DNA from: Octopus sinensis
Lineage: Eukaryota
Direction of reading: 5' to 3'
Assembly: GCF_006345805.1 (NCBI RefSeq)
Contig: NC_043025.1
Location: forward strand, 7,564,001 to 7,628,000
DNA: 64,000 nt
Shown: positions 13,334-62,490 of the stretch, one piece after another
How the letters are laid out: each line of letters begins with the position of its first letter
How positions within the stretch are numbered: position 1 is the stretch's first letter
Program-made: the position numbers and the translations under genes
The notes under the pieces: model-generated
Told to the model about the DNA's origin: nothing
The model's input: the letters and a program-made list of their open reading frames with translations, nothing else
Databases searched by the model: none

Positions 13334-13528
13334 TTATTATTATTATTATTATTATATTATGTATTTATTAGAGTAAAGGAAGATGGTGAGCTGGTGGAAT
13401 CATTTGCACGCTGGGTGAAATGCTTAGCTGCATTTTGTCTACTGCTACATTCGTCTACCGCTACATTTTATCTATCGCTACATTCCGTTAAGGTCAACTC
13501 TGCCCTCCATCCTTTCGGGGTTGATTAA

Positions 13529-19297: not shown

Positions 19298-20145
19298 TCG
19301 AGGACATGAAAGATGCTGTTGAAGAAGAGAGTCATGAAGAGGAGCTGCCAGACGGCTCGAAAGTGAAACACAAGTTGATGCGTGTGCGCTCAGAGAGCAT
19401 AGATAAGAAGCTGACAGAAAAGCTGGTGAAGGTCGTCGAGAAACTGAAGGCTCCGAAGGAGCACACGACAGTTGAGGATTACGAGACGGTGCTCCCGGAT
19501 GGCACGATTCATCGGGTGCACAAAGTGATCAAGCACTCGGTGTCGCACATTCAACGCGAGCACCAACACGAGGGCATGGTAGAGAAGGTGTTTGACGGCG
19601 TCGTCAAGATACCCGGCTCTGAGTCACAGGAGACGCTTGAGACATTCGAACGGCCCCCTCACCCAGAGACAATCGTCGAGCAAGTGGAAGAGGTTCTACC
19701 ATCGGGCCAGGTGCAAAAGCGCAAGATCATCAAAAACCGCATGATCCACAACATTAAAACGCGGCACGAATCATTCGACAATGACCTTGGCCAGCAGAAC
19801 GAAGAGTATGAGATTGATGAGGTAATACCAGGCACTGAGACCTGTTTTTATGCAGACATTGATGGTTCGTCGAACGTGAGCAGCGCTTCATGCAGCGACG
19901 TTGAGGACATGGAAGAGGAGAGCGATACCAAGAAAACTGACCTTGGTACGGTGCAGGAAGTGTGTGAGGATGGCACAATAGTGACAAAGGAGATCGTCGA
20001 GACTCGTACGACCACCACGAGGACGCTTCACTCCCGTTCTGGCTCGGTCGACAAAGAAACTACAGAATCTGTTATCACAGAGGAGTTCATAACGCCAACA
20101 CCCAGTCCTAGATCTGGTTCACCAATAGACGAGATGAAGAAGTGA
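19298..20145 (+). CDS. Terminal coding exon (~282 aa) of an acidic protein with ExLPDG-type internal repeats; possibly the C-terminal tail of an ankyrin-like cytoskeletal protein
   Basis: Stop-free, codon-like, GC-elevated island. Putative acceptor ccgttgcag| at 19297 (phase 1), stop TGA at 20143-20145, followed by A-rich UTR-like sequence with AATAAA. The ORF-track start at 19069 is microsatellite read-through. Exon reality is well supported; product identity is a weak recollection. Confidence 0.75.
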
Positions 20146-32318: not shown

Positions 32319-32555
32319 AGTGCATGTTTATTGTTGACATAACGTCCCTCCCAAGATACAACAAAAGCTGTTCCAACAGGAGTTCATGTCAAGAATTTCA
32401 AGAATGTTGCTAACCAAATGCAAAAATGAAATACTTAATATTCTATCTGTATTTTTTAATCATTGTATTTTTATCTTTATTTAATTTCTTTCATTAACCA
32501 TTTAGCATTCACATTACTCTTTCAACTGTGATTCTTATTTATCCACATTGTTTTG

Positions 32556-35500
32556 AATTAATCCTGCATTATCTCATAGCTTTGAGATTTCAATGATATG
32601 ATTGTTTATTTTTAGAATGACATTGTAGGGTAGGTGTGAGAGGCAGGATCTGGCCTTGTTTTTAATTAATCCTGCATTATCTCATAGCTTTGAGATTTCA
32701 ATGATATGATTGTTTATTTTTAGAATGACATTGTAGGGTAGGTGTGAGAGGCAGGATCTGGCTTGTTTTTAATTAATCCTGCATTATCTCATAGCTTTGA
32801 GATTTCAATGATGTGATTGTTTATTTTTAGAATGACATTGTAGGGTAGGTGTGAGAGGCAGGATCTGGCCTTGTTTTTAATTAATCCTGCATTATCTCAT
32901 AGCTTGAGATTTCAATGATGTGATTTTTATTTTTAGAATGACATTGTAGGGTAGGTGTGAGAGGCAGGATCTGGCCTTGTTTTTATTAATCCTGCATATC
33001 TCATAGCTTTGAGATTTCAATGATGTGATTGGTTAGTTTTAGAATGACATTGTAGGGTAGGTATGAGAGGAGGATCTGGCCTTGTTTTTAATTAATCCTG
33101 CATTATCTCATAGCTTTGAGATTTCAATGATGTGATTGTTTATTTTTAGAATGACATTGTAGGGTAGGTGTGAGAGGCAGGATCTGGCCTTGTTTTTAAT
33201 TAATCCTGCATTATCTCATAGCTTTGAGATTTCAATGATGTGATTGTTTATTTTTAGAATGACATTGTAGGGTAGGTGTGAGAGGCAGGATCTGGCCTTG
33301 TTTTTAATTAATCCTGCATTATCTCATAGCTTTGAGATTTCAATGATGTGATTGTTTATTTTTAGAATGACATTGTAGGGTAGGTGTGAGAGGCAGGATC
33401 TGGCCTTGTTTTTAATTAATCCTGCATTATCTCATAGCTTTGAGATTTCAATGATGTGATTGTTTATTTTTAGAATGACATTGTAGGGTAGGTATGAGAG
33501 GCAGGATCTGGCCTTGTTTTGAATTAATCCTGCATTATCTCATAGCTTTGAGATTTCAATGATGTGATTGTTTATTTTTAAAATGACATTGTAGGCTAGG
33601 TGTGAGAGGCAGGATCTGGCCTTGTTTTGAATTAATCCTGCATTATCTCATAGCTTTGAGATTTCAATGATGTGATTGTTTATTTTTAGAATGACATTGT
33701 AGGGTAGGTATGAGAGGCAGGATCTGGCCTTGTTTTGAATTAATCCTGCATTATCTCATAGCTTTGAGATTTCAATGATGTGATTGTTTATTTTTAAAAT
33801 GACATTGTAGGCTAGGTGTGAGAGGCAGGATCTGGCCTTGTTTTGAATTAATCCTGCATTATCTCATAGCTTTGAGATTTCAATGATGTGATTGTTTATT
33901 TTTAGAATGACATTGTAGGCTAGGTGTGAGAGGCTGGATCAGGCCTTGTTTTGAATTAATCATGCATTATCTCACAGCTTTGAGATTTCAATGATGTGAT
34001 TGGTTAGTTTTAGAATGACATTGTAGGGTAGGTGTGAGAGGCAGGATCTGGCCTGTTTTTAATTAATCCTGCATTATCTCATAGCTTTGAGATTTCAATG
34101 ATATGATTGTTTATTTTTAGAATGACATTGTAGGGTAGGTGTGAGAGGCAGGATCTGGCCTGTTTTTAATTAATCCTGCATTATCTCAAGCTTTGAGATT
34201 TCAATGATGTGTTGTTTATTTTTAGAATGACATTGTAGGGTAGGTGTGAGAGGCAGGATCTGGCCTTGTTTTTAATTAATCCTGCTTATCTCATAGCTTT
34301 GAGATTTCAATGATGTGATTGTTTATTTTTAGAATGACATTGTAGGGTAGGTGTGAGAGGCAGGATCTGGCCTTGTTTTTATTTAATCCTGCATATCTCA
34401 TAGCTTTGAGATTTCAATGATGTGATTGGTTAGTTTTAGAATGACATTGTAGGGTAGGTATGAGAGGCAGGATCTGGCCTTGTTTTTAATTAATCCTGCA
34501 TTATCTCATAGCTTTGAGATTTCAATGATGTGATTGTTTATTTTTAGAATGACATTGTAGGGTAGGGTAGGTGTGAGAGGCAGGATCTGGCCTTGTTTTT
34601 AATTAATCCTGCATTATCTCATAGCTTTGAGATTTCAATGATGTGATTGTTTATTTTTAGAATGACATTGTAGGGTAGGTGTGAGAGGCAGGATCTGGCC
34701 TTGTTTTTAATAATCCTGCATTATCTCATAGCTTTGAGATTTCAATGATGTGATTGTTTATTTTTAGAATGACATTGTAGGGTAGGGGTGAGAGGCAGGA
34801 TCTGGCTTGTTTTTAATTAATCCTGCATTATCTCATAGCTTTGAGATTCAATGATGTGATTGTTTATTTTTAGAATGACATTGTAGGGTAGGTATGAGAG
34901 GCAGGATCTGGCCTTGTTTTGAATTAATCCTGCATTATCTCATAGCTTTGAGATTTCAATGATGTGATTGTTTATTTTTAGAATGACATTGTAGGCTAGG
35001 TGTGAGAGGCAGGATCTGGCCTTGTTTTGAATTAATCCTGCATTATCTCATAGCTTTGAGATTTCAATGATGTGATTGTTTATTTTTAGAATGACATTGT
35101 AGGGTAGGTATGAGAGGCAGGATCTGGCCTTGTTTTGAATTAATCCTGCATTATCTCATAGCTTTGAGATTTCAATGATGTGATTTTTATTTTTAGAATG
35201 ACATTGTAGGCTAGGTGTGAGAGGCAGGATCTGCCTTGTTTTGAATTAATCCTGCATTATCTCATAGCTTTGAGATTTCAATGATGTGATTGTTTATTTT
35301 TAGAATGACATTGTAGGCTAGGTGTGAGAGGCTGGATCAGGCCTTGTTTTGAATTAATCATGCATATCTCACAGCTTTGAGATTTCAATGATGTGATTGG
35401 TTAGTTTTAGAATGACATTGTAGGGTAGGTGTGAGAGGCAGGATCTGGCCTTGTTTTTAATTAATCATGCATTATCTCATGGCTTTGAGATTTCAATGAT

Positions 35501-35770
35501 GTGATTGGTTAGTTTTAGAATGACATTGTAGGGTAGGTGTGAGAGGCAGGATCTGGCCTTGTTTTTAATTAATCATGCATTATCTCATGGCTTTGAGATT
35601 TCAATGATGTGATTGTTTATTTTTAAAATGACATTGTAGGCTAGGTGTGAGAGGCTGGATCAGGCCTTGTTTTGAATTAATCATGCATTATCTCACAGCT
35701 TTGAGATTTCAATGATGTGATTGTTTATTTTTAGAATGACATTGTAGGGTATGTGTGAGAGGCAGGATCT
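32556..35770. repeat. Tandem array, 108-bp unit, ~30 copies, internal to a piggyBac-type MITE
   Basis: aattaatcctgcattatctcatagc...ggatctggccttgttttt starts at 32556 and 32664. MITE left end ttaaccatttagcattc at ~32495; right-end remnant gaacataaaacatagaatatttgg at ~35780. Confidence 0.95.
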
Positions 35771-46363: not shown

Positions 46364-46528
46364 TCATCACCACCACTACCACCATCACCATCATCATCAT
46401 CATCACCATCATCACCATCATCAATCACCACTACCACCACCGCCGCTGCCACTACCATCATCGTCATCGTCATCACTACAAAATATTCGGTAATCTCCTT
46501 TCTCATGTCCGATTTCTTCTCTTCACAG

Positions 46529-46683
46529 GAATTCCCCAGGCAACACTGGACAAGCTCCGTGATGAGTTCATCGCCAACGACCGACTCATGTTTACGCAGG
46601 GTGTATGCAACCATGTCAACATCAACGAGATATCCCGTTGTCCTCGGCAACTACTTGACGTTAACCATGTTTTCAATGTCAAG
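46529..46683 (+). CDS. BLMH: Bleomycin hydrolase, N-terminal coding exon (probably exon 2)
   Basis: Acceptor cttctcttcacag|, donor AAG|gtacat. Phase-1 start, reads (G)IPQATLDKLRDEFIANDRLMFTQGVCNHVNINEISRCPRQLLDVNHVFNVK, collinear with the recalled human BLMH N-terminus (GLNSEKV...QHVFQH). Joins in frame to the next exon. Confidence 0.8.
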
Positions 46684-46735: not shown

Positions 46736-48846
46736 GGGTCTTTTCGGTTTGACCGGCAGTTTTTCCCAGCGGTGTCATATGAAATTGTCACCCATAATTA
46801 TGACCCTAGTATCCATCTATTGCATTTCAATCTATTTTAGGGTTAGGGTTAGGGGATCTTTTCGGTTTGAACAGCAGTTTTTTCTAGCGGTGTCATATGA
46901 AATTGTCACCCATAATTATGACCCTAGTATCCATCTATTGCATTTCAATCTGTTTTAGGGTTAGGGTTAGGGGATCTTTTCGGTTTGAACAGCAGTTTTT
47001 TCTAGCGGTGTCATATGAAATTGTCACCTATAATTATGACCCTAGTATCCATCTATTGCATTTCAATCTGTTTTAGGGTTAGGGTTAGGGGATCTTTTCG
47101 GTTTGACCGGCAGTTTTTTCACAGCGGTGTCATATGAAATTGTCACCCATAATTATGACCCTAGTATCCATCTATTGCATTTCAATCTATTTTAGGGTTA
47201 GGGTTAGGGGATCTTTTCGGTTTGAACAGCAGTTTTTTCTAGCGGTGTCATATGAAATTGTCACCATAATTATGACCCTAGTATCCATCTATTGCATTTC
47301 AATCTATTTTAGGGTTGGGTTAGGGGATCTTTTCGGTTTGAACAGCAGTTTTTTCTAGCGGTGTCATATGAAATTGTCACCTATAATTATGACCCTAGTA
47401 TCCATCTATTGCATTTCAATCTGTTTTAGGGTTAGGGTTAGGGGATCTTTTCGGTTTGACCGGCAGTTTTTCCCAGCGGTGTCATATGAAATTGTCACCC
47501 ATAATTATGACCCTAGTATCCATCTATTGCATTTCAATCTATTTTAGGGTTAGGGTTAGGGGATCTTTTCGGTTTGAACAGCAGTTTTTCCCAGCGGTGT
47601 CATATGAAATTGTCACCCATAATTATGACCCTAGTATCCATCTATTGCATTTCAATCTATTTTAGGGTTAGGGTTAGGGGATCTTTTCGGTTTGAACAGC
47701 AGTTTTTTCTAGCGGTGTCATATGAAATTGTCACCCATAATTATGACCCTAGTATCGATCTATTGCATTTCAATCTGTATTAGGGTTAGGGTTAGGGGGT
47801 CTTTTTTTCGTCACAAATGTAAATAAACCCAGTCTATTTCTTAAACGAGGGACATATTCATACGGCACAGAATGTTTTTTTTTACCTCAATAGACGTCAT
47901 TGATTGGTTGAAATTGCAGAAATTGAAGAAAAAAAACAACAAATATCTTACAAACCATAGAATTTTCTCAATAAAGCCAAGAGAAAAAGATGTTTTATAA
48001 ACACATTCTACCAGTATACGAAGTTTAAAAGTGTTTGGTTACATGGAAATTATTTTAAAAAACTGCCGTTCAAACCGAAAAGATCCCTGTTTCTTAAACG
48101 AGGGACATATTCATACAGCACAGAATGTTTTTTTTACCTCAATAGACGTCATTGATGGTTGAAATTGCAGAAATTGAAGAAAAAAAACAACAAATAACTT
48201 ACAAACCATAGAATTTTCTCAATAAAGCCAAGAGAAAAAGATGTTTTATAAACACATTCTACCAGTATACGAAGTTTAAAAGTGTTTGGTTACATGGAAA
48301 TTATTTTAAAAAACTGCCGTTCAAACCGAAAAGATCCCTGTTTCTTAAACGAGGGACATATTCATACAGCACAGAATGTTTTTTTTTTACCTCAATAGAC
48401 GTCATTGATTGGTTGAAATTGCAGAAATTGAAGAAAAAAAACAACAAATATCTTACAAACCATAGAATTTTCTCAATAAAGCCAAGAGAAAAAGATGTTT
48501 TATAAACACATTCTACCAGTATACGAAGTTTAAAAGTGTTTGGTTACATGGAAATTATTTGAAAAAACTGCCGTTCAAACCGAAAAGATCCCTGTTTCTT
48601 AAACGAGGGACATATTCATACAGCACAGAATGTTTTTTTTTACCTCAATAGACGTCATTGATTGGTTGAAATTGCAGAAATTGAAGAAAAGAAACAACAA
48701 ATATCTTACAAACTATAGAATTTTCTCAATAAAGCCAAGAGAAAAAGATGTTTTATAAACACATTCTACCAGTATACGAAGTTTAAAATTTTATAGTTAC
48801 GTGGAAATTATTTAAAAAAAACTGCCCGTCAAACCAAAAAAATCCC
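46736..48846. repeat. MITE (monomer at 4766-5198) with left arm amplified ~9x (118 bp) and right arm 4x (~251-254 bp)
   Basis: gatcttttcgg recurs at 46855, 46973, 47091, 47210, 47326, 47444, 47562 and 47680. The right TIR ...gatccc occurs at 48082, 48333, 48587 and ~48845. Confidence 0.9.
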
Positions 48847-49211: not shown

Positions 49212-50065
49212 AGATGATCTTTGTTGATGCCTCCACCAAGTTTGGAGATGGTCTAACGAATGGGACCTGTGCCTGAACGTGTCAAAGTGCTGTCATCTGC
49301 CTGTTGGCTCTTCTCCTGCAACTCAACTTGATTTTGAGCCGGGTCATCTGCTGCTGGAGAGGACCGACCAGGTAAAGGACCTGGGTATCTTGGGAGATTC
49401 TTCCTCTTCGCCTTCGGCCCAGTGCGTCCATGCTGCCAACAAAGCACGCGGAGTTCTGTTTTTGATTCGACGGTCATTCGGAATGCTCACAGCAGCCATA
49501 TTCCTACCACTTTATGTCACGCTGGTGAGACCCATATTGGAGTACGGGATTCAAGCCTCTTCTCCTTATCTCCTCAAAGACATACATCATCTCGAAAGAG
49601 TCCAGAAGCTGGCTACCCGCATGGTTCTTGGTCTCAAGCATTTGTCTAATGAAGAAAGGCTGAAGACGCTCAACCTTTATTCTCTTGAAAAACGCCGCCG
49701 CCGTGGTGATCTCATTCTTGCTCACAACATCATAAGCGGAAAGTGTAACCTCTCGAAAGAGCTGTACTTCACTCCTGCTCCACAGCGTCGGCTGCGGGGT
49801 CACTCCGAAAAGCTCTATCTGCGACGATTTCATCTCAATCGAAGGAGAGGGGCTTTCTCCGTCCGGGTTACGGATCCGTGGAATAAGCTGCCGGACGAGA
49901 TAGTGAAGATGCCGACGACCGCTCGGTTCAAAGTCTCTCTTGACCACAAATGGCCTGAACTCTTTTGAACACCCTCCCTGTACATAACTCCATGTCCCCC
50001 TACATGGCCGTGCTTTTTGCTTTTTGAGCCAAAAAATTAACTTAACTTAACTTCACTTAACTTAG
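49212..50065 (+). mobile_element. 5'-truncated CR1-clade LINE (C-terminal ORF2 plus 3' UTR with (TTAAC)n tail), in a BLMH intron
   Basis: Open frame WSNEWDLCLNVSKC...VKDLGI...ANKARGVL..IRRSF....F.PLYVTLVRPILEYG.QA.SPY..KDI..LERVQK.ATRMV.GL...EERL..LNLYSLE.RR.RGDLI...RV...WNKLP; tail ttaacttaacttaac. Confidence 0.9.
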
Positions 50066-50163: not shown

Positions 50164-50313
50164 GTCGAAGAAGCAAAACCAGTGACCCACCAGAGAGCAT
50201 CGGGGCGATGTTGGATATTTGCTGCACTCAATCAGATGAGAATCCCATTCATGGAAAAATTTGAAGTGCCAGAGTTTGAATTCAGCCAAGCATATCTGTT
50301 CTTTTGGGATAAA
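50164..50313 (+). CDS. BLMH: Bleomycin hydrolase exon with catalytic cysteine
   Basis: Acceptor ctccattaacag|, donor AAA|gtgagt. Reads [50 protein letters not shown], matching the peptidase C1B Q..SGRCWIF and FEFSQ.YLFFWDK motifs. Confidence 0.97.
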
Positions 50314-50496
50314 GTGAGTAACCCCACCATCTTCTGCTATATGCCTCTCTCTCTCTCTCTCCCTCGGAATCTGTCTATCCATTCATTCATCTATATATCT
50401 TGCTATTCATCCATCCACCCACCCATCCATCCATCCATCCATCCATCCACTCAGTCAGCCATCCATCCATCCATCCATCCATCCATCCATCCATCT

Positions 50497-52820
50497 TTCT
50501 ATCTATCCATCCATCCATTTATCTATCTGTTTGTCTGTCTGTCATCCACCCATCCATGTATCTTTCTATCTATCCATCCATCCATTTATCTATCTGTTTG
50601 TCTGTCTGTCATCCACCCATCCATGTATCTTTCTATCTATCCATCCATCCATTTATCTATCTGTTTGTCTGTCTGTCATCCACCCATCCATGTATCTTTC
50701 TATCTATCCATCCATCCATTTATCTATCTGTTTGTCTGTCTGTCATCCACCCATCCATGTATCTTTCTATCTATCTATCCATCCATCCATTTATCTATCT
50801 GTTTGTCTGTCTGTCATCCACCCATCCATGTATCTTTCTATCTATCCATCCATCCATTTATCTATCTGTTTGTCTGTCTGTCATCCACCCATCCATGTAT
50901 CTTTCTATCTATCCATCCATCCATTTATCTATCTGTTTGTCTGTCTGTCATCCACCCATCCATGTATCTTTCTATCTATCCATCCATCCATTTATCTATC
51001 TGTTTGTCTGTCTGTCATCCATCCACCCATCCATGTATCTTTCTATCTATCCATCCATCCATTTATCTATCTGTTTGTCTGTCTGTCATCCACCCATCCA
51101 TGTATCTTTCTATCTATCCATCCATCCATTTATCTATCTGTTTGTCTGTCTGTCCATCCACCCATCCATGTATCTTTCTATCTATCCATCCATCCATTTA
51201 TCTATCTGTTTGTCTGTCTGTCATCCACCCATCCATGTATCTTTCTATCTATCCATCCATCCATTTATCTATCTGTTTGTCTGTCTGTCATCCACCCATC
51301 CATGTATCTTTCTATCTATCCATCCATCCGTTTATCTATCTGTTTGTCTGTCTGTCATCCACCCATCCATGTATCTTTCTATCTATCCATCCATCCATTT
51401 ATCTCTGTTTTTGTCTGTCTGTCATCCACCCATCCATGTATCTTTCTATCTATCCATCCATCCATTCTATCTGTTTGTCTGTCTGTCATCCACCCATCCA
51501 TGTATCTTTCTATCTATCCATCCATCCATTTATCTATCTGTTTGTCTGTCTGTCATCCACCCATCCATGTATCTTTCTATCTATCCATCCATCCATTTAT
51601 CTATCTTTTGTCTGTCTGTCATCCACCCATCCATGTATCTTTCTATCTATCCATCCATCCATTTATCTATCTGTTTGTCTGTCTGTCATCCACCCATCCA
51701 TGTATCTTTCTATCTATCCATCCATCCATTTATCTATCTGTTTGTCTGTCTGTCATCCACCCATCCATGTATCTTTCTATCTATCCATCCATCCATTTAT
51801 CTATCTGTTTGTCTGTCTGTCATCCACCCATCCATGTATCTTTCTATCTATCCATCCATCCATTTATCTATCTGTTTGTCTGTCTGTCATCCACCCATCC
51901 ATGTATCTTTCTATCTATCCATCCATCCATTTATCTATCTGTTTGTCTGTCTGTCATCCACCCATCCATGTATCTTTCTATCTATCCATCCATCCATTTA
52001 TCTATCTGTTTGTCTGTCTGTCATCCACCCATCCATGTATCTTTCTATCTATCCATCCATCCATTTATCTATCTGTTTGTCTGTCTGTCATCCACCATCC
52101 ATGTATCTTTCTATCTATCCATCCATCCATTTATCTATCTGTTTGTCTGTCTGTCATCCACCCATCCATGTATCTTTCTATCTATCCATCCATCCATTTA
52201 TCTATCTGTTTGTCTGTCTGTCATCCACCCATCCATGTATCTTTCTATCTATCCATCCATTTATCTATCTGTTTGTCTGTCTGTCATCCACCCATCCATG
52301 TATCTTTCTATCTATCCATCCATCCATTTATCTATCTTTTGTCTGTCTGTCATCCACCCATCCATGTATCTTTCTATCTATCCATCCATCCATTTATCTA
52401 TCTGTTTGTCTGTCTGTCATCCACCCATCCATGTATCATTTCTATCTATCCATCCATCCGTTTATCTATCTGTTTGTCTGTCTGTCATCCACCCATCCAT
52501 GTATCTTTCTATCTATCCATCCATCCATTTATCTATCTGTTTGTCTGTCTGTCATCCACCCATCCATGTATCTTTCTATCTATCCATCCATCCATTTATC
52601 TATCTGTTTGTCTGTCTGTCATCCACCCATCCATGTATCTTTCTATCTATCCATCCATCCATTTATCTATCTGTTTGTCTGTCTGTCATCCACCCATCCA
52701 TGTATCTTTCTATCTATCCATCCATCCATTTATCTATCTGTTTGTCTGTCTGTCATCCACCCATCCATGTATCTTTCTATCTATCCATCCATCCATTTAT
52801 CTATCTGTTTGTCTGTCTGT
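50497..52820. repeat. Tandem array, 67-bp unit built from CCAT/CTAT/CTGT tetramers, ~35 copies
   Basis: atccacccatccatgtatctttctatctatccatccatccatttatctatctgtttgtctgtctgtc starts at 50544 and 50611 and continues. Confidence 0.95.
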
Positions 52821-53235
52821 CTATCTGTTTATCTACCTAGCTATCCATCCATCCATCCACCTATATATATACATGCATACACACACACATATATATGTAT
52901 ATTTATGAATATGTGTGTGTGTGTGCATGTGTGTGTGTTAAGCAAAATATGAGTTAGAGCTTATGCAACCGTCTAAGGGATAAATGTATCCGTAGACACT
53001 CCTGGTGTATTACCTTAGTATGTATAGTCCTAGCTATAAGGTAGGACTATAGCTAATTGGTAATTTAAGGATAAAACTGTAGTTTAATATAAATAGTTCC
53101 GAACTACAATTAAATAATGACTTTTTAATACCAATAATCAACTTCTCATTGTTAATTACTGCTCCATTTCTTTTCGTTTCTTTTCTTTTCTATATATATA
53201 TATTAGAAAGTTTGGAGATGATGTACAGGTATTTA

Positions 53236-53392
53236 ATATTAGAAGAAATGAGGTACTCAGAAATTCGGATGGTTTTATATTTACAGATATTTATTTGTAT
53301 ATTACATGATGTATAAAAACATGTAATATACAAATAAATATCTGTAAATATAAAACCATCCGAATTTCTGAGTACCTCATTTCTTCTAATAT
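53236..53392. repeat. Perfect 73-bp hairpin with 11-nt loop
   Basis: 53236-53308 is the exact reverse complement of 53320-53392; loop atgtataaaaa. Confidence 0.9.
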
Positions 53393-53399
53393 ATATCAT

Positions 53400-54199
53400 C
53401 ATCATCATCATTTAGCATCCGCTTTACATGCTAGCATGGGTTGGACGCTTCAACTGGGGTCTGGGAAGCCAGAAGGCTGCACCAGGCCCAGTCTGATCTG
53501 GCAATGTTTCTATGGCCGGATGCCCTTCCTAACACCAACCACTCCATGAATGTAGTGGGTGCTTTTTACGTGCCACCAGCACGGAGGCCCGTTGGGGTGG
53601 CGCTGGCAACGGCCACGTTCAGATGGTTTGCTTACGTGCCACCAGCACTGGTATCACAGCTACAATTTCCATTGATGTTGATCGATTTCGATTTTGATTC
53701 TGATTCTCACTGGCCTGCTTGCTTAGCCTGTGGGGTGGCGTCATTTGAAGGCTAAAACAGTGCGAAGCGCATTGTGATCAGCGATGTGTAGCAACATCTG
53801 ATGGCCTGGTCGGTCACGGTGATCACAGTGATATATATATATATATTTGTTGCCAGCGCCGCCCCGACTGGCCTCTGTGCCAGTGGCACGTAAAAAGCAC
53901 CATCCGATTGTGGCTGTTGCCGGCCTTGTCTGGTCCCCGTGCTGGTGGCACATAAAAAGCACCATCCGATCGTGGCCGTTTGCCAGCCTTGTCTGGCACC
54001 TGTGCAGGTGGCACGTAAAAAGCACCCACTACACTCACGGAGTGGTTGGCGTTAGGAAGGGCATCCAGCTGTAGAAACACTGCCAGATCAGACTGGGCCT
54101 GGTGCAGTCTCCTGGCTTCTCAGACCCAGTTGAACCGTCCAACCCATGCTAGCATGGAAAACGGACGTTAAACGATGATGATGATGATGATGATGATGA

Positions 54200-54200
<1 letters not shown>
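53400..54200. mobile_element. Two oppositely oriented (ATG)n-tailed retroposon copies separated by a family-C SINE 3' fragment
   Basis: 53400-53700 has a (CAT)n tail on the left; 53850-54200 has an (ATG)n tail on the right. Both contain the 141-bp-unit sequence. Confidence 0.75.
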
Positions 54201-54230
<30 letters not shown>

Positions 54231-54355
54231 ATTATCATGCAATGTATGTATAAACACACAGGCACATATCTCAGTGTCTCTCTTTCACTTGCTTTCTCCC
54301 TCCACTCTCTAACTCATTCTCTCTCTTTATCTCTCTCTCTTTCTCTCTCCCTCAG

Positions 54356-54586
54356 CTTGAGAGAAGCAACTTCATCCTGGATGCGTTCATTGACTGCGCT
54401 CGCAACGGCAACACGGCCGGCAGCCGAGTGGTTGACCACTTGCTGGTCAATGCCTCCGATGATGGTGGCCAATGGGACATGTTGGTCAACTTGATTTCCA
54501 AATATGGTATTGTACCAAAGAATATCTACCCAGACACCGTGTCCTGTGAGGCTTCTAGATATTTGGTCAGCATCATCAGTCACAAG
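54356..54586 (+). CDS. BLMH: Bleomycin hydrolase exon (copy 1)
   Basis: Acceptor ctctccctcag|, donor AAG|gtatgt, phase 0-0. Reads LERSNFILDAFIDCARNGNTAGSRVVDHLLVNASDDGGQWDMLVNLISKYGIVPKNIYPDTVSCEASRYLVSIISHK, with the family DGGQWDM..N...KYG.VP motif. Confidence 0.95.
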
Positions 54587-54971
54587 GTATGTGTTTGACC
54601 CCTCGGATCTTTTCGGTTTGAACGGCAGTTTTTTCAAATAATTTCCATGTAACTAAAAAATTTTAAACTTCGTATACTGGTAGAATGTGTTTATAAAACA
54701 TCTTTTTCTCTTGGCTTTATTGAGGAAATTCTATAGTTTGTAAGATATTTGTTGTTTTTTTTCTTCAATTTCTGCAATTTCAACCAATCAATGACATCTA
54801 TTGAGGTAAAAAAAAACATTTGGTCATTTGGTCAGCCTGAGGCTATAACAGAAAACACTTGCCCAAGGTGCCATGCAGTGGAACTGAACCTGGAACTATG
54901 TGGTTGAGAAGCAAATTTCTTATCATACAGACACACACACACACACACATATTTATGTATGTATGTATGCA

Positions 54972-55060
<89 letters not shown>

Positions 55061-55204
55061 TGTGTGTGTGTGTGTGAATATTATCATGCAATGTATGTAT
55101 AAACACACAGGCACATATCTCAGTGTCTCTCTTTCACTTGCTTTCTCCCTCCACTCTCTAACTCATTCTCTCTCTTTATCTCTCTCTCTTTCTCTCTCCC
55201 TCAG

Positions 55205-55435
55205 CTTGAGAGAAGCAACTTCATCCTGGATGCGTTCATTGACTGCGCTCGCAACGGCAACACGGCCGGCAGCCGAGTGGTTGACCACTTGCTGGTCAAT
55301 GCCTCCGATGATGGTGGCCAATGGGACATGTTGGTCAACTTGATTTCCAAATATGGTATTGTACCAAAGAATATCTACCCAGACACCGTGTCCTGTGAGG
55401 CTTCTAGATATTTGGTCAGCATCATCAGTCACAAG
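55205..55435 (+). CDS. BLMH: Bleomycin hydrolase exon (identical copy 2)
   Basis: Nucleotide-identical to 54356-54586 with the same splice sites. Which copy is used, or whether both exist in vivo, is unknown. Confidence 0.7.
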
Positions 55436-55826
55436 GTATGTGTTTGACCCCTCGGATCTTTTCGGTTTGAACGGCAGTTTTTTCAAATAATTTCCATGTA
55501 ACTAAAAAATTTTAAACTTCGTATACTGGTAGAATGTGTTTATAAAACATCTTTTTCTCTTGGCTTTATTGAGGAAATTCTATAGTTTGTAAGATATTTG
55601 TTGTTTTTTTTCTTCAATTTCTGCAATTTCAACCAATCAATGACATCTATTGAGGTAAAAAAAAACATTTGGTCATTTGGTCAGCCTGAGGCTATAACAG
55701 AAAACACTTGCCCAAGGTGCCATGCAGTGGAACTGAACCTGGAACTATGTGGTTGAGAAGCAAATTTCTTATCATACAGACACACACACACACACACATA
55801 TTTATGTATGTATGTATGCATATATG

Positions 55827-55920
<94 letters not shown>

Positions 55921-55921
<1 letters not shown>

Positions 55922-56222
55922 GAGGCGCAATGGCCCAGTGGTTAGAGCAGCGGACTCGCGGTCGTAGGATTGCGGTTTCGATTCCCAGACCGGGCGTTGT
56001 GAGTGTTTATTGAGCGAAAACACCTAAAGCTCCACGAGGCTCCAGCAGGGGGTGGTGGCGATCCCTGCTGTACTCTTTCGCCACAATTTTCTCTCAGTCT
56101 TTCTTCTGTTGGCCTGCTCGCTTAGCCAGCGGGGTGGCGTCATTTGAAGGCTAAAACAATGCGAAGTGCATTGTGACCAGCGATGTGTAGTAACATCTGA
56201 TAGCCTGGTCGGTCACGGTGAT
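55921..56222 (+). mobile_element. tRNA-derived SINE (family C), full length
   Basis: ggaggcgcaatggcccagtggttagagcagcggactcg...gtttcgattccc...ggtcggtcacggtgata. Confidence 0.8.
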
Positions 56223-56233
56223 ATATATATATA

Positions 56234-56633
56234 CTAGCAGTATCGCCTGGCGTTGCTCGGGTTTGTAAGGGAAATAACTATATAAGCATTTTTAGAATGT
56301 AAAGTATAATAGCCATCTCAATATGGCTAACCACAAAGGTGGGGGTGTTACTGTAGCTTTTTACGTTCTGAGATTTAATAATACATTTTTAGAGAGTTAC
56401 TTCCCTTATATAATAGCAAAAAAATGTATTAAAAATGGGGGAAAATGATGGTAAATTTTTCTTTAAATCGTAGACTCATCGTAGACGCGCGCTAATACCC
56501 AGAAGGGCTCGATATGAATCACGACTATAAGATACCCAGTTTTGGTTAAACTGCACCGCAAAATGTGGGAGTAGTTAGAAATCTAAATCGTAGGAGACAG
56601 ACACACACACAACCTTACTTTTATAGATAAAAA
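56234..56633 (-). mobile_element. Non-autonomous Helitron
   Basis: ctagcagtatcgcctggcgttgctcggg...; same family as 701-998. Confidence 0.8.
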
Positions 56634-56848: not shown

Positions 56849-56941
56849 ATGCGAGAATACTGCAAAATCCTTCAAGAAAATGTCGTAAAGGGAGTTACAG
56901 ATGCTGATCTACAGGTTCTAAAAGAGGGAATGGTTAAAGAG
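56849..56941 (+). CDS. BLMH: Bleomycin hydrolase exon
   Basis: Acceptor tttttgttctactaag|, donor GAG|gtaagc, phase 0-0. Reads MREYCKILQENVVKGVTDADLQVLKEGMVKE, collinear with recalled human MREFCIRLRNLVHSGATKGEISATQDVMMEE. Confidence 0.9.
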
Positions 56942-57098
56942 GTAAGCACTTGCATGTCTTTGATTTTCTCTCTTACCTGTTGTTAATGGACAAACATGCA
57001 TAAATATACCCATACACACGTATACGTACACACTCACACACACACACATACATGCATGCATGTATACACATACATGTACTCACACAAATGTATTGCCT

Positions 57099-57131
<33 letters not shown>

Positions 57132-57145
57132 GTTCAATGTCCGTT

Positions 57146-60100
57146 TTCCATGCTAGCATGGGCTGGACGGTTCAACTGGAGTCTGGGAAGCCAGAAGGCT
57201 GCACCAGGCTCCGGTCTGATCTGGCAGTGTTTCTACAGCTGGATGCCCTTCCTAACGCCAACCACTCCGTGAGTGTAGTGGGTGCTTTCCATGCTGGCAT
57301 GGGTTGGACGGTTCAACTGGGGTCTGGGAAGCCAGAAGGCTGCACCAGGCCCAGTCTGATCTGGCAGTGTTTCTACAGCTGGATGCCCTTCCTAACGCCA
57401 ACCACTCCGTGAGTGTAGTGGGTGCTTTCCATGCTAGCATGGGTTGGACGGTTCAACTGGGGTCTGGGAAGCTAGAAGGCTGCACCAGGCACCGGTCTGA
57501 TCTGGCAGTGTTTCTACAGTTGGATGCCCTTCCTAACGCCAACCACTCCGTGAGTGTAGTGGGTGCTTTCCATGCTAGCATGGGTTGGACGGTTCAACTG
57601 GGGTCTGGGAAGCCAGGAGGATGCACCAGGCTCCGGTCTGATCTGGCAGTGTTTCTACAGCTGGATGCCCTTCCTGACGCCAACCACTACGTGAGTGTAG
57701 TGGGTGCTTTCCATGCTAGCATGGGTTGGACGGTTCAACTGGGGTCTGGGAAGCCAGGAGGATGCACCAGGCTCCGGTCTGATCTGGCAGTGTTTCTACA
57801 GCTGGATGCCCTTCCTAACGCCAACCACTCAGTGAGTGTAGTGGGTGCTTTCCATGCTAGCATGGGTTGGACAGTTCAACTGGGGTCTGGGAAGCCAGGA
57901 GGATGCACCAGGCTCCGGTCTGATCTGGCAGTGTTTCTACAGCTGGATGCCCTTCCTAACGCCAACCACTCCGTGAGTGTAGTGGGTGCTTTCCATGCTA
58001 GCATGGGTTGGACGGTTCAACGGGGTCTGGGAAGCCAGGAGGATGCACCAGGCTCCGGTCTGATCTGGCAGTGTTTCTACAGCTGGATGCCCTTCCTAAC
58101 ACCAATCACTCCGTGAGTGTAGTGGGTGCTTTCCATGCTAGCATGGGTTGGACGGTTCAACTGGGGTCTGGGAAGCCGGGAGGATGCACCAGGCTCCGGT
58201 CTGATCTGGCAGTGTTTCTACAGCTGGATGCCCTTCTTAACGCCAACCACTCCGTGAGTGTAGTGGGTGCTTTCCCTGCTAGCATGGGTTGGACGGTTCA
58301 ACTGGGGTCTGGGAAGCCAGAAGGCTGCACCAGGCTCTGGTCTGATCTGGCAGTGTTTCTACAGCTGGATGCCCTTCCTAACGCCAACCACTCCGTGAGT
58401 GTAGTGGGTGCTTTCCATGCTAGCATGGGTTGGACGGTTCAACTGGGGTCTGGGAAGCCAGGAGGATGCACCAGGCTCCGGTCTGATCTGGCAGTGTTTC
58501 TACAGCTGGATGCCCTTCCTAACACCAATCACTCCGTGAGTGTAGTGGGTGCTTTCCATGCTAGCATGGGTTGGACGGTTCAACTGGGGTCTGGGAAGCC
58601 GGGAGGATGCACCAGGCTCCGGTCTGATCTGGCAGTGTTTCTACAGCTGGATGCCCTTCTTAACGCCAACCATTCCGTGAGTGTAGTGGGTGCTTTCCCT
58701 GCTAGCATGGGTTGGACGGTTCAACTGGGGTCTGGGAAGCCAGAAGGCTGCACCAGGCTCTGGTCTGATCTGGCAGTGTTTCTACAGCTGGATGCCCTTC
58801 CTAACGCCAACCACTCCGTGAGTGTAGTGGGTGCTTTCCATGCTAGCATGGGTTGGACGGATCAACTGGGGTCTGGGAAGCCAGAAGGCTGCACCAGGCT
58901 CCGGTCTGATCTGGCAGTGTTTCTACAGCTCGATGCCCTTCCTAACGCCAACCACTCCGTGAGTGTAGTGGGTGCTTTCCATGCTAGCATGGGTTGGACG
59001 GTTCAACTGGGGTCTGGGAAGCCAGAAGGCTGCACCAGGCTCTGGTCTGATCTGGCAGTGTTTCTACAGCTGGATGCCCTTCCTAACGCCAACCACTCCG
59101 TGAGTGTAGTGGGTGCTTTCCATGCTAGCATGGGTTGCACGGTTCAACTGGGGTCTGGGAAGCCAGAAGGCTGCACCAGGCTCCGGTCTGATCTGGCAGT
59201 GTTTCTACAGCTGGATGCCCTTCCTAACGCCAACCACTCCGTGAGTGTAGTGGGTGCTTTCCATGCTAGCATGGGTTGGACGGTTCAACTGGGGTCTGGG
59301 AAGCCAGGAGGCTGCACCAGGCTCCGGTCTGATCTGGCAGTGTTTCTACAGCTGGATGCCCTTCCTAACGCCAACCACTCTGTGAGTGTAGTGGGTGCTT
59401 TCCATGCTAGCATAGGTTGGACGGTTCAACTGGGGTCTGGGAAGCCAGAAGGCTGCACCAGGCTCCGGTCTGATCTGGCAGTGTTTCTACAGCTGGATGC
59501 CCTTCCTAACGCCAACCACTCCGTGAGTGTAGTGGGTGCTTTCCATGCTAGCATGGGTTGGACGGTTCAACTGGGGTCCGGGAAGCCAGAAGGCTGCACC
59601 AGGCTCCGGTCTGATCTGGCAGTGTTTCTACAGCTGGATGCCCTTCCTAACGCCAACCACTCCGTGAGTGTAGTGGGTGCTTTCCATGCTAGCATGGGTT
59701 GGACGGTTCAACTGGGGTCTGGGAAGCCAGAAGGCTGCACCAGGCTCCGGTCTGATCTGACAGTGTTTCTACAGCTGGATGCCCTTCCTAACGCCAACCA
59801 CTCCGTGAGTGTAGTGGGTGCTTTCCATGCTAGCATGGGTTGGACGGTTCAACTGGGGTCTGTGAAGCCAGAAGGCTGCACCAGGCTCCGGTCTGATCTG
59901 GCAGTGTTTCTACAGCTGGATGCCCTTCCTAACGCCAACCACTCCGTGAGTGTAGTGGGTGCTTTCCATGCTAGCATGGGTTGGACGGTTCAACTGGGGT
60001 CTGGGAAGCCAGAAGGCTGCACCAGGCTCTGGTCTGATCTGGCAGTGTTTCTACAGCTGGATGCCCTTCCTAACGCCAACCACTCCGTGAGTGTAGTGGG

Positions 60101-62490
60101 TGCTTTCCATGCTAGCATGGGTTGGACGGTTCAACTGGGGTCTGGGAAGCCAGAAGGCTGCACCAGGCCCAGTCTGATCTGGCAGTGTTTCTATGGCTGG
60201 ATGCCCTTCTTAACGCCAACCACTCCGTGAGTGTAGTGGGTGCTTTCCTGCTAGCATGGTTGGACGGTTCAACTGGGGTCTGGGAAGCCAGAAGGCTGCA
60301 CCAGGCTCTGGTCTGATCTGGCAGTGTTTCTACAGCTGGATGCCCTTCCTAACGCCAACACTCCGTGAGTGTAGTGGGTGCTTTCCATGCTAGCATGGGT
60401 TGGACGGTTCAACTGGGGTCTGGGAAGCCAGGAGGATGCACCAGGCTCCGGTCTGATCTGGCAGTGTTTCTACAGCTGGATGCCCTTCCTAACACCAATC
60501 ACTCCGTGAGTGTAGTGGGTGCTTTCCATGCTAGCATGGGTTGGACGGTTCAACTGGGGTCTGGGAAGCCGGGAGGATGCACCAGGCTCCGGTCTGATCT
60601 GGCAGTGTTTCTACAGCTGGATGCCCTTCTTAACGCCAACCACTCCGTGAGTGTAGTGGGTGCTTTCCCTGCTAGCATGGGTTGGACGGTCAACTGGGGT
60701 CTGGGAAGCCAGAAGGCTGCACCAGGCTCTGGTCTGATCTGGCAGTGTTTCTACAGCTGGATGCCCTTCCTAACGCCAACCACTCCGTGAGTGTAGTGGG
60801 TGCTTTCCATGCTAGCATGGGTTGGACGGATCAACTGGGGTCTGGGAAGCCAGAAGGCTGCACCAGGCTCCGGTCTGATCTGGCAGTGTTTCTACAGCTC
60901 GATGCCCTTCCTAACGCCAACCACTCCGTGAGTGTAGTGGGTGCTTTCCATGCTAGCATGGGTTGGATGGTTCAACTGGGGTCTGGGAAGCCAGAAGGCT
61001 GCACCAGGCTCTGGTCTGATCTGGCAGTGTTCTACACAGCTGGATGCCCTTCCTAACGCCAACCACTCCGTGAGTGTAGTGGGTGCTTTCCATGCTAGCA
61101 TGGGTTGGACGGTTCAACTGGGGTCTGGGAAGCCAGAGGCTGCACCAGGCTCCGGTCTGATCTGGCAGTGTTTCTACAGCTCGATGCCCTTCCTAACGCC
61201 AACCACTCCGTGAGTGTAGTGGGTGCTTTCATGCTAGCATGGGTTGGACGGTTCAACTGGTCTGGGAAGCCAGGAGGCTGCACCAGGCTCCGGTCTGATC
61301 TGGCAGTGTTCTACAGCTGGATACCCTTCCTAACGCCAACCACTCTGTGAGTGTAGTGGGTGCTTTCCATGCTAGCATAGGTTGGACGGTTCAATGGGGT
61401 CTGGAAGCCAGAAGGCTGCACCAGGCTCCGGTCTGATCTGGCAGTGTTTCTACAGCTGGATGCCCTTCCTAACGCAACCACTCCGTGAGTGTAGTGGGTG
61501 CTTTCCATGCTAGCATGGGTTGGACGGTTCAACTGGGGTCGGGAAGCCAGAAGGCTGCACCAGGCTCCGGTCTGATCTGGCAGTGTTTCTACAGCTGGAT
61601 GCCCTTCCTAACGCCAACCACTCCGTGAGTGTAGTGGGTGCTTTCCATGCTAGCATGGGTTGGACGGTTCAACTGGGGTCTGGGAAGCCAGAAGGCTGCA
61701 CCAGGCTCCGGTCTGATCTGATAGTGTTTCTACAGCTGGATGCCCTTCCTAACGCCAACCACTCCGTGAGTGTAGTGGGTGCTTTCCATGCTAGCATGGG
61801 TTGGACGGTTCAACTGGGGTCTGGGAAGCCAGAAGGCTGCACCAGGCTCCGGTCTGATCTGGCAGTGTTTCTACAGCTGGATGCCCTTCCTAACGCCAAC
61901 CACTCCGTGAGTGTAGTGGGTGCTTTCCATGCTAGCATGGGTTGGACGGTTCAACTGGGGTCTGGGAAGCCAGAAGGCTGCACCAGGCTCTGGTCTGATC
62001 TGGCAGTGTTTCTACAGCTGGATGCCCTTCCTAACGCCAACCACTCCGTGAGTGTAGTGGGTGCTTTCCATGCTAGCATGGGTTGGACGGTTCAACTGGG
62101 GTCTGGGAAGCCAGAAGGCTGCACCAGGCCCAGTCTGATCTGGCAGTGTTTCTATGGCTGGATGCCCTTCCTAACGCCAACCACTCCGTGAGTGTAGTGG
62201 GTGCTTTCCATGCTAGCATGGGTTGGATGGTTCAACTGGGGTCTGGGAAGCCAGAAGGCTGCACCAGGCTCCGGTCTGATCTGGCAGTGTTTCTACAGCT
62301 GGATGCCCTTCCTAACGCCAACCACTCCGTGAGTGTAGTGGGTGCTTTCCATGCTAGCATGGGTTGGACGGTTCAACTGGGGTCTGGGAAGCCAGAAGGC
62401 TGCACCAGGCTCCAGTCTGATCTGGCAGTGTTTCTACAGCTGGATGCCCTTCCTAACGCCAACCACTCCATGAGTGTAGTGGGTGCTTTT
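57146..62490. repeat. Tandem array, 141-bp unit, ~38 copies, internal to one (ATG)n-tailed retroposon (element spans ~57101-62860, minus strand)
   Basis: Unit ttccatgctagcatgggttggacgg...gagtgtagtgggtgct. The (CAT)n tail is at 57101-57131 and the single-copy element body resumes at ~62490. Confidence 0.95.

What the first reader, a model, noticed from the sequence alone, without database searches (positions are those of the whole stretch)
54200..55920. Perfect in-frame tandem duplication of a bleomycin hydrolase exon
An 849-bp unit containing the 231-nt phase 0-0 exon (DGGQWDM motif) and both splice sites occurs twice with identical exon sequence. The breakpoints fall in (TG)n tracts, as expected for unequal exchange between microsatellites. 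If real, transcripts could include one copy (normal enzyme) or both (77-aa internal duplication), which would be the birth stage of a mutually exclusive exon pair. Complete identity means it is very recent, polymorphic or an assembly artefact.
Basis: seen in the sequence. Interest (0 to 1): 0.7.

Follow-up and report, generated by a model that had tools for sequence, protein, structure and literature searches.

The report
Duplicated exon in octopus bleomycin hydrolase
The Octopus sinensis reference genome holds two identical head-to-tail copies of one coding exon of a bleomycin hydrolase gene, joined inside a TG microsatellite; this is either a very young structural variant or an assembly error, and nothing shows that the second copy is used.

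Summary
Window 54212-54982 and 55061-55831 are 771 bp of perfect identity at a period of 849 bp. Each copy carries a 231-nt phase 0-0 exon (54356-54586 and 55205-55435) with identical AG/GT splice sites. The unit is bounded by (TG)n tracts. The exon matches human bleomycin hydrolase residues 107-183 (Pfam PF03051).

The window is Octopus sinensis GCA_006345805.1, CM016887.1 about 7.564-7.628 Mb, gene LOC115226075. Single copy is the ancestral state: Argonauta hians has the exon once on each of two gap-free contigs. O. bimaculoides shows one copy, next to a 980-N gap. Every annotated protein carries one copy, including three RefSeq isoforms built on this same assembly and the O. vulgaris orthologue.

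Zero differences in 771 bp puts a real duplication at under about 1 My, after the O. sinensis/O. vulgaris split.

No feature would enforce mutually exclusive splicing. The intron between the copies is 618 nt, both copies use GT-AG, double inclusion stays in frame, and no long-range competing RNA pairing appears in the minimum-energy fold. "Birth of a mutually exclusive exon pair" is therefore unsupported.

Real variant (about 0.5) versus assembly artefact (about 0.4) cannot be settled without reads. Interest is low to moderate.

The parts
54174..54227 (+). Left boundary: (GAT)9 at 54174-54200 (shares its last base with the TG tract), then (TG)14 at 54200-54227. The TG tract is the left breakpoint tract.
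   Evidence: O. bimaculoides has a (TG)n tract at the same place, L001:11133-11149.
54228..55076 (+). Unit copy 1 (849 bp): 128 nt of upstream intron, exon a, 12 nt of orthologous intron, repeat fragment A (54603-54820), repeat fragment B (54826-54934), then the tail (CA)n (TATG)n (TA)34 (TG)7 T (TG)8.
54356..54586 (+). Exon a: 231 nt, phase 0-0, 77 aa, LERSNF...DDGGQWDM...ISHK, equivalent to human BLMH residues 107-183.
54587..55204 (+). The 618-nt intron that would separate exon a from exon b if both were spliced in. It runs from the GT donor of copy 1 to the AG acceptor of copy 2.
   Evidence: and the coordinates.
55046..55076 (+). Duplication joint: (TG)7 T (TG)8, a TG tract with a one-base phase break.
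55077..55921 (+). Unit copy 2 (845 bp). It is identical to copy 1 up to the TA tract. Its tail is (TA)2 T (TA)34 (TG)11.
55205..55435 (+). Exon b, identical to exon a.
55922..56250 (+). SINE-like element directly right of the duplication. It is unique flank, useful for spanning reads or PCR. The end coordinate is approximate.
   Evidence: It is 93% similar to 53711-53823 (family D4). ARAGORN calls no tRNA there.
50164..50313 (+). Preceding exon of the same gene, with the catalytic-cysteine motif SGRCWIF. It ends in phase 0.
56850..56942 (+). Following exon (MREYCKILQENVVKGVTDADLQVLKEGMVKE), phase 0-0.
46528..46683 (+). Earlier coding exon of the gene (GIPQATLDKLRDEF...VFNVK). Boundaries are approximate.

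Best explanation
This is a real but very young tandem segmental duplication of about 0.85 kb in the Octopus sinensis bleomycin hydrolase paralogue LOC115226075. It probably sits on one haplotype or is polymorphic.

Shown: two head-to-tail copies of one coding exon, with 128 nt of upstream intron and about 490 nt of downstream intron, sit in a gap-free stretch of the reference. The joint is a TG tract.

Inferred: an ancestral (TG)n tract upstream of the exon and the (TG)n tail of a repeat-derived microsatellite block downstream paired out of register. This could have happened by unequal exchange between chromatids or by replication slippage or template switching. It gave L-U-(TA)n-(TG)hybrid-U-(TA)n-R. 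The event is younger than about 1 My, so it postdates the split from O. vulgaris.

Inferred consequence: the two exons have identical splice signals and a normal 618-nt intron between them. By default both would be included, which would insert 77 residues into the core of the single peptidase C1B domain and probably cripple that allele. Such an allele could persist because it is rare or recessive and because octopods have a second BLMH paralogue. It is not an evolved alternative-splicing device.
For: The window has no N at all and carries kilobase-scale satellites assembled through. The assembly is the PacBio plus Hi-C assembly GCA_006345805.1 (cited as Li et al. 2020 in PMC10700109). Long reads would span an 849-bp unit, although read lengths for this assembly were not checked.

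The joint is what exchange between two existing TG tracts predicts. The left tract (TG)14 and right tract (TG)11 are intact and the middle tract is a hybrid. The left tract is ancestral.

An assembly gap between the copies is one hallmark of false duplications listed in PMC9516828, and it is absent here.

The same intron system has clearly undergone real tandem expansion since O. bimaculoides. A 67-bp unit is present 35 times here against about 200 bp there.

No other two-copy perfect duplication occurs in 139 kb of this assembly, so there is no sign of a systematic duplicating error.

A second paralogue exists and is well represented in transcript assemblies (P0172, 15 contigs).
Against: All three RefSeq BLMH isoforms built on this very assembly contain the exon once. 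In-frame exon duplications normally yield transcripts with both copies (general knowledge from disease genes).

The gene is under purifying selection: 8 synonymous and 1 non-synonymous difference from O. bimaculoides in this exon. A 77-aa insert should therefore be deleterious.

The copies agree down to a pure (TA)34 run in each, which is suspicious for such a mutable tract.

The one-base irregularities in the joint and in the second TA tract look like noisy long-read consensus.

This assembly has 5.2% duplicated BUSCOs, against 0.4-0.5% in O. bimaculoides and O. vulgaris (PMC10700109).

No reads could be examined.
Confidence: 0.5

Rival explanations
1. Assembly artefact. The animal has one copy, and the second was created during long-read assembly, consensus, polishing or gap filling around the TA/TG microsatellites. 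This would be a false 'homotype' duplication, or a mis-resolved heterozygous microsatellite allele.
For: The identity is 100% over 771 bp, and each copy has the same pure (TA)34 run. One-base oddities sit exactly at the joint, (TG)7 T (TG)8, and in the second TA tract. All annotated proteins from this assembly and from O. vulgaris have one copy. The assembly has ten-fold more duplicated BUSCOs than sister assemblies. Its BLMH models also end about 115 aa early relative to O. vulgaris, which hints at local assembly or annotation trouble in this gene. The exon belongs to a conserved enzyme under purifying selection.
Against: There is no gap between the copies and no N anywhere in the window, whereas same-scaffold false duplications typically flank gaps (PMC9516828). 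Haplotype-type false duplications are usually much larger than 0.85 kb and carry allelic differences. I know of no simple way for a long-read overlap assembler to double an 849-bp segment through a 30-bp TG overlap (inference). No second case was found in 139 kb.
Confidence: 0.4
2. Nascent regulated exon pair. The duplication is real, and transcripts already use exon a or exon b alternatively, or sometimes both. This would be the first step toward a mutually exclusive exon pair.
For: Tandem exon duplication is the accepted origin of mutually exclusive exons. Duplications that take intron sequence along can create competing RNA pairings at once (PMC6071210; PMC9741552 and PMC9013439). The exon is symmetric (phase 0-0) and the protein models have exactly one copy. 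Each unit tail carries complementary CA/TA/TG tracts.
Against: The copies are identical, so choosing between them changes nothing in the protein. The intron between them is 618 nt, both introns are GT-AG, and double inclusion is in frame. The known enforcing mechanisms are therefore absent. In the minimum-energy fold the CA, TA and TG tracts pair locally within each tail, not across an exon. Among the 150 best of 684 matches in 1.84 billion representative proteins, and among 120 BLMH relatives, no homologue has this segment twice. No transcript data could be inspected.
Confidence: 0.05

Closest known systems
Recent tandem exon duplications, the raw material of mutually exclusive exons (Kondrashov and Koonin 2001 and Letunic et al. 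2002, from memory; PMC9741552, PMC9013439, PMC6071210)
   Same: Two adjacent copies of one symmetric exon lie in one gene with equal length and phase. Intron sequence was duplicated along with the exon.
   Different: Known functional cases are mostly ancient, their copies have diverged, and they are spliced exclusively. Here the copies are identical, no exclusivity mechanism is visible, and not even the presence in the genome is verified.
Repeat-mediated intragenic duplications, as seen in human disease genes (for example single-exon duplications in DMD or BRCA1; general knowledge)
   Same: The segment is kilobase-scale, its breakpoints lie in short repeats, the result is in frame, and both exon copies are expected in the mRNA.
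   Different: Here the mediating repeats are TG microsatellites rather than Alu-type elements. No transcript or phenotype data exist.
False duplications in genome assemblies (Ko et al. 2022, PMC9516828)
   Same: A duplicated coding segment lies next to its source on the same scaffold, in an unphased assembly that has elevated BUSCO duplication.
   Different: There is no gap between the copies and no allelic differences, and the segment is far smaller than typical haplotig duplications. Read depth, the key criterion, could not be tested.
Bleomycin hydrolase / aminopeptidase C (peptidase family C1B; human BLMH 1CB5, yeast Gal6 1GCB)
   Same: The three window exons align to human BLMH 58-213 without gaps (E 2e-53) and to Pfam PF03051 (E 2e-59). 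The motifs SGRCW and DGGQWDM are present.
   Different: This gene is the less-represented of two octopod paralogues, and some models fuse it to unrelated N-terminal exons. The C-terminal catalytic His/Asn part lies outside the window.

Membership tests
Peptidase C1B (bleomycin hydrolase / PepC), Pfam PF03051 | Significant match to the family profile above the curated cut-off | tested here: met
   202 bits against a cut-off of 22, profile positions 55-207 of 438. Human BLMH 1CB5 matches at E 2e-53 over residues 58-213.
Peptidase C1B (bleomycin hydrolase / PepC), Pfam PF03051 | Catalytic cysteine in the QxxSGRCW context | tested here: met
   [11 protein letters not shown] is encoded at 50164-50313 and aligns to human NQKSSGRCWIF.
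Peptidase C1B (bleomycin hydrolase / PepC), Pfam PF03051 | Catalytic His and Asn in the C-terminal half | not testable with these tools
   Those exons lie beyond the window. The O. sinensis models stop at ...CLDMRA, whereas the O. vulgaris orthologue P0151 continues through ...MTHAML...VENSWG....
Tandem exon duplication | Two adjacent homologous exons of equal length and phase, with their own splice sites, between the same neighbouring exons | tested here: met
   54356-54586 and 55205-55435 are identical, each 231 nt, phase 0-0, with AG/GT sites.
Mutually exclusive exon pair | Transcripts contain exactly one of the two exons | tested here: inconclusive
   All protein models have one copy. This would equally follow from an artefact, from an allele absent in the RNA donors, or from homology-guided gene models. 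No reads were available.
Mutually exclusive exon pair | A mechanism that forbids double inclusion: an intron too short to splice, incompatible U2/U12 sites, a frame shift with decay, or competing docking/selector RNA pairing | tested here: not met
   The intron is 618 nt and both introns are GT-AG. 231 nt keeps the frame. The minimum-energy fold shows only local pairing of the microsatellite tails.
Mutually exclusive exon pair | The copies differ, so that the isoforms differ | tested here: not met
   0 differences in 231 nt.
False (assembly) duplication, criteria of PMC9516828 | An assembly gap between the duplicated copies | tested here: not met
   The window has no N.
False (assembly) duplication, criteria of PMC9516828 | Half or very low read depth over the copies, and discordant or non-spanning reads | not testable with these tools
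   No tool gives access to reads. Look-ups for short-read contigs carrying the exon found nothing.

The most novel reading that the evidence does not exclude
The duplication is real and segregates in Octopus sinensis, and carriers splice exon a or exon b alternately, with some double inclusion. That would be a live population-level snapshot of a tandem-duplicated exon before any divergence, in a conserved hexameric protease, created by a microsatellite exchange whose parental tracts are still intact.
Probability: 0.06. Interest if true: 0.55.

Novelty: new member of a known kind. Interest (0 to 1): 0.25.

Why it matters
If real, this is a datable example (under about 1 My) of how microsatellites create in-frame exon duplications. 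Both parental tracts and the hybrid joint are still readable, and a sister species (O. vulgaris, split about 2.5 Mya) and two outgroups give the ancestral state. It could be used to ask what the spliceosome does with two identical neighbouring exons before any regulation has evolved. If it is an artefact, it is a small caution for the O. sinensis reference, which is used as an annotation scaffold for O. vulgaris work (PMC10700109). Either way it does not change what is known about bleomycin hydrolase or about the origin of mutually exclusive exons.

Tried and rejected
1. O. vulgaris DNA was not retrievable. The gene range is 132 kb, above the 100-kb limit. Only the protein (one copy) was seen.

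2. I fetched O. sinensis DNA through a shorter isoform (L003). It proved to be the same assembly as the window and covers only window 1-30145. It identifies the source but is not independent.

3. I tried four exact look-ups of ORF products that a gene caller might have called on short-read contigs of the unit and one exact DNA scan of JGI metagenome contigs with a 42-mer of the exon. All were empty.

4. The first homologue search with the 77-aa exon returned only a paralogue fragment. The exhaustive representative search was needed to find the species' own proteins.

5. Proteins with 7-9 'repeated' matches to the exon (P0025, P0031, P0121) looked at first like duplications. The two I inspected (P0031, P0121) are pentatricopeptide-like repeat proteins with a chance GGxWQ motif.

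6. One search seemed to show a three-exon tandem duplication in Argonauta hians. That was my error, because two loci were in one BLAST database. Searched separately, each locus has every exon once.

7. I tested the idea that the two (UA)34 tracts pair and loop out exon b. They are perfectly complementary, but the minimum-energy fold makes local hairpins instead.

8. A literature search for BLMH domain boundaries found nothing usable. I ran no structure prediction of the doubled protein, because custom chimeric sequences are not accepted and a partial fragment would be uninformative.

Full report
**Observation**

Reading 53900-56200 and comparing the sequence with itself at an offset of 849 bp shows that 54212-54982 and 55061-55831 are identical over 771 bp. 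The repeat finder reports the same pair with 849-bp spacing. A gapped alignment extends the similarity through the microsatellites on both sides.

Self-BLAST of the whole window finds no other two-copy repeat of at least 97% identity. Every other hit belongs to a multi-copy satellite.

Each copy contains a 231-nt open segment (54356-54586 and 55205-55435). It translates to LERSNFILDAFIDCARNGNTAGSRVVDHLLVNASDDGGQWDMLVNLISKYGIVPKNIYPDTVSCEASRYLVSIISHK. A pyrimidine-rich tract and cag precede it, and gtatgt follows it.

The tract layout, counted, is:
- (GAT)9 (TG)14
- unit 1
- (TA)34 (TG)7 T (TG)8
- unit 2
- (TA)2 T (TA)34 (TG)11
- a SINE-like element

**What the exon is**

With a BLMH sequence as a lead, tblastn finds the neighbouring exons at 50164-50313 and 56850-56942. 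Their borders are ag|GTC...AAA|gtgagt and ag|ATG...GAG|gtaagc, so all junctions are phase 0.

The spliced 158-aa peptide matches human bleomycin hydrolase (1CB5) residues 58-213 without a gap (E 2e-53), and also yeast Gal6 and bacterial aminopeptidase C. It matches Pfam PF03051 at 202 bits. The duplicated exon corresponds to human residues 107-183.

From general knowledge of papain-like folds, the GG-containing DGGQWDM...YG segment belongs to the core of the L domain that lines the active-site cleft. It is not a linker. A construct with both copies stays in frame and gives two Pfam stretches.

**Source of the window**

The exhaustive search of 1.84 billion representative proteins returned two near-identical proteins. 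Cluster look-up names them:
- P0002 is XP_036370871.1, bleomycin hydrolase isoform X1 of Octopus sinensis.
- P0003 is XP_014770707.2 of O. bimaculoides.

P0002 maps to GCA_006345805.1. A shorter isoform of the same locus (P0164) gave 105 kb of that record, CM016887.1:7489124-7594145. Its last 30,145 bases are identical to the first 30,145 bases of the window. The window is therefore CM016887.1 about 7,564,001-7,628,000, and the duplication lies at about 7,618,200-7,619,921.

The O. vulgaris genome paper cites this assembly as Li et al. 2020. It reports 5.2% duplicated BUSCOs for it, against 0.5% for O. vulgaris and 0.4% for O. bimaculoides. It gives divergence times of about 2.5 My (O. sinensis/O. 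vulgaris) and about 34 My (O. bimaculoides) (PMC10700109). That the assembly is PacBio plus Hi-C is my recollection of the title of Li et al. 2020. The paper itself is not in the searchable library.

**Comparative evidence**

Proteins. O. sinensis isoforms X1, X2 and X3 were all annotated on this very assembly. They read ...FFWDK-LERSNF...ISHK-MREYCK..., with the exon once. So do the O. vulgaris orthologue CAI9744397.1 and three O. bimaculoides models. Three diagnostic residues (FIAND, FNVK, GVTDA) match O. sinensis and not O. vulgaris.

O. bimaculoides DNA (L001). Both window copies hit a single place (11132-11521, about 91% identity). A (TG)n tract sits directly upstream of AATATT as in the window, so the left tract is ancestral. 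Homology stops 12 nt after the exon. A 980-N gap follows 370 bp later and swallows the next exon. This locus alone cannot exclude a second copy.

Argonauta hians DNA. The gene lies on two gap-free contigs (L004, L005), and each carries each of the three exons once. Single copy is therefore the ancestral condition.

Repeat content. Within the unit, 54603-54820 belongs to a repeat family with copies at 92-97% identity elsewhere in the window. 54826-54934 belongs to a second family at about 80-85%. The right-hand TA/TG block thus sits at the end of interspersed-repeat fragments that O. bimaculoides lacks at this site.

**Age, if real**

Against O. bimaculoides the exon shows 9 differences, 8 synonymous and 1 Tyr/Phe, so the gene is under purifying selection. 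The 126 alignable intron sites give a Jukes-Cantor distance of 0.188, or about 2.8e-9 per site per year per lineage over 34 My. This is a rough figure from few sites.

Zero differences between two 771-bp copies then gives a 95% upper bound of about 0.7 My. The bound is about 0.9 My if only about 600 sites are counted as neutral. Both estimates postdate the O. sinensis/O. vulgaris split.

The pure TA run is 34 units in both copies. For so long a dinucleotide tract this suggests a far younger event (inference from general microsatellite mutation rates). It also fits one locus having been written twice.

**How it formed (inferred)**

The outer tracts, (TG)14 on the left and (TG)11 on the right, are intact, and the middle tract is a TG tract. 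This is the product expected when the right tract of one chromatid pairs with the left tract of the other. Slippage or template switching between the two tracts on one template would give the same result.

The extra T in the joint, and the (TA)2 T at the start of the second TA tract, may be out-of-register joining or later slippage. They may also be one-base consensus errors of noisy long reads. The sequence alone cannot distinguish these.

**What it would do**

The two exons have identical splice signals and enhancer content and are separated by an ordinary 618-nt GT-AG intron. From what is known of in-frame exon duplications in human disease genes, the default outcome is inclusion of both. 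That would place 77 extra residues inside the single catalytic domain of a hexameric self-compartmentalising protease and most likely impair folding or assembly (inference).

No natural precedent was found. None of the 150 best-scoring matches (of 684) in 1.84 billion representative proteins has this segment twice, nor does any of 120 listed BLMH relatives. The multi-stretch hits are single copies split by read-through or pentatricopeptide-like proteins.

I tested the model of Ivanov and Pervouchine (PMC6071210), in which a duplication that copies one arm of a stem creates competing pairings. The unit tails do hold mutually complementary CA, TA and TG tracts, and the two (TA)34 tracts are perfectly complementary. 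In the minimum-energy fold of 54100-56000, however, each tail pairs with itself and no exon is looped out. Nothing visible would make splicing exclusive, and identical copies would make exclusivity functionally meaningless.

**Real or artefact**

For a real duplication:
- The sequence is gap-free with kilobase satellites assembled through.
- The joint has the expected recombination signature, and one parental tract is shown to be ancestral.
- There is no gap between the copies, and a gap is one of the hallmarks of false duplications (PMC9516828).
- There is clear evidence of real tandem expansion in the neighbouring intron since O. bimaculoides.
- No second such duplication occurs in 139 kb of this assembly.

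For an artefact:
- The identity is perfect, down to the TA run.
- One-base oddities sit at the joint.
- All models built on this assembly carry one copy.
- The gene is under purifying selection.
- The assembly has a raised BUSCO duplication rate.
- Its BLMH models are truncated relative to O. vulgaris.

I put a real duplication, probably heterozygous or polymorphic, at about 0.5, an artefact at about 0.4, and an already alternatively spliced nascent exon pair at about 0.05. Reads decide the matter, and the tests are listed under decisive next steps.

**Comparison with what is known, and verdict**

Tandem exon duplication as the source of mutually exclusive exons is well established (PMC9741552, PMC9013439, PMC6071210), as are repeat-mediated intragenic duplications and false duplications in assemblies.

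This case passes the membership test for 'tandem exon duplication' and for peptidase C1B. It fails two of the three defining features of a mutually exclusive exon pair, and the third is inconclusive. At best it is a new, very young member of a known kind, and at worst an assembly error. Interest is low to moderate.

Noticed in passing
L001:770-1394 (O. bimaculoides); L002 (Logan ERR12921341); protein P0172: Octopods have a second bleomycin hydrolase paralogue, about 65% identical and 456 aa, seen on 15 transcript-type contigs. In O. bimaculoides its exons lie about 9 kb upstream of the orthologue of the window gene. In O. sinensis it is not within about 120 kb upstream.
   Followed up: partly
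outside the window (proteins P0002, P0153, P0154 versus P0151): All O. sinensis RefSeq BLMH isoforms end at ...GIGCLDMRA. That is about 115 aa short of the O. vulgaris orthologue and lacks the His/Asn half. It may be an assembly or annotation defect further 3' in the same gene.
   Followed up: no
window 19414-19542 and proteins P0151, P0152, P0156: An exon of an acidic, uncharacterised protein (LOC115226075 isoforms X4-X7) lies 27 kb upstream of the first bleomycin hydrolase exon seen in the window (about 46.5 kb). In the O. vulgaris model it is spliced onto the BLMH exons, giving a 692-aa fusion.
   Followed up: no
window 50476-52821: A 67-bp satellite of 35 copies at 97% identity fills the intron just upstream of the duplication. 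O. bimaculoides has only about 200 bp of related simple sequence there (L001:10535-10741), so the array expanded in the O. sinensis lineage.
   Followed up: partly
window 57145-62489: A 141-bp satellite of 38 copies at 96% identity (G+C about 57%) occupies the intron after exon 56850-56942. It derives from the same SINE-like family that flanks the duplication.
   Followed up: no
window 11276-13334, 32548-35770, 46739-47805, 47837-48846: There are four more satellite arrays, with periods of 139, 108, 118 and 254 bp. The 254-bp array is the inverted form of repeat fragment A inside the duplicated unit, at 95-97% identity.
   Followed up: partly
window 53236-53308 / 53320-53392: A perfect 73-nt inverted repeat with an 11-nt spacer lies in AT-rich intron sequence about 0.8 kb upstream of the duplication. 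Its origin is unknown.
   Followed up: no
window 49279-49968 (+): A 229-aa ORF resembles the C-terminal part of a LINE reverse transcriptase, judged by eye. It lies in the intron upstream of the catalytic-cysteine exon.
   Followed up: no
L004 and L005 (Argonauta hians GCA_054771915.1, contigs BAAFZT010000122.1 and BAAFZT010000009.1): The same 459-aa protein is encoded on two contigs of about 5 Mb at similar offsets. These are probably the two haplotypes kept in one assembly, which would be counted as a gene duplication if taken at face value.
   Followed up: partly
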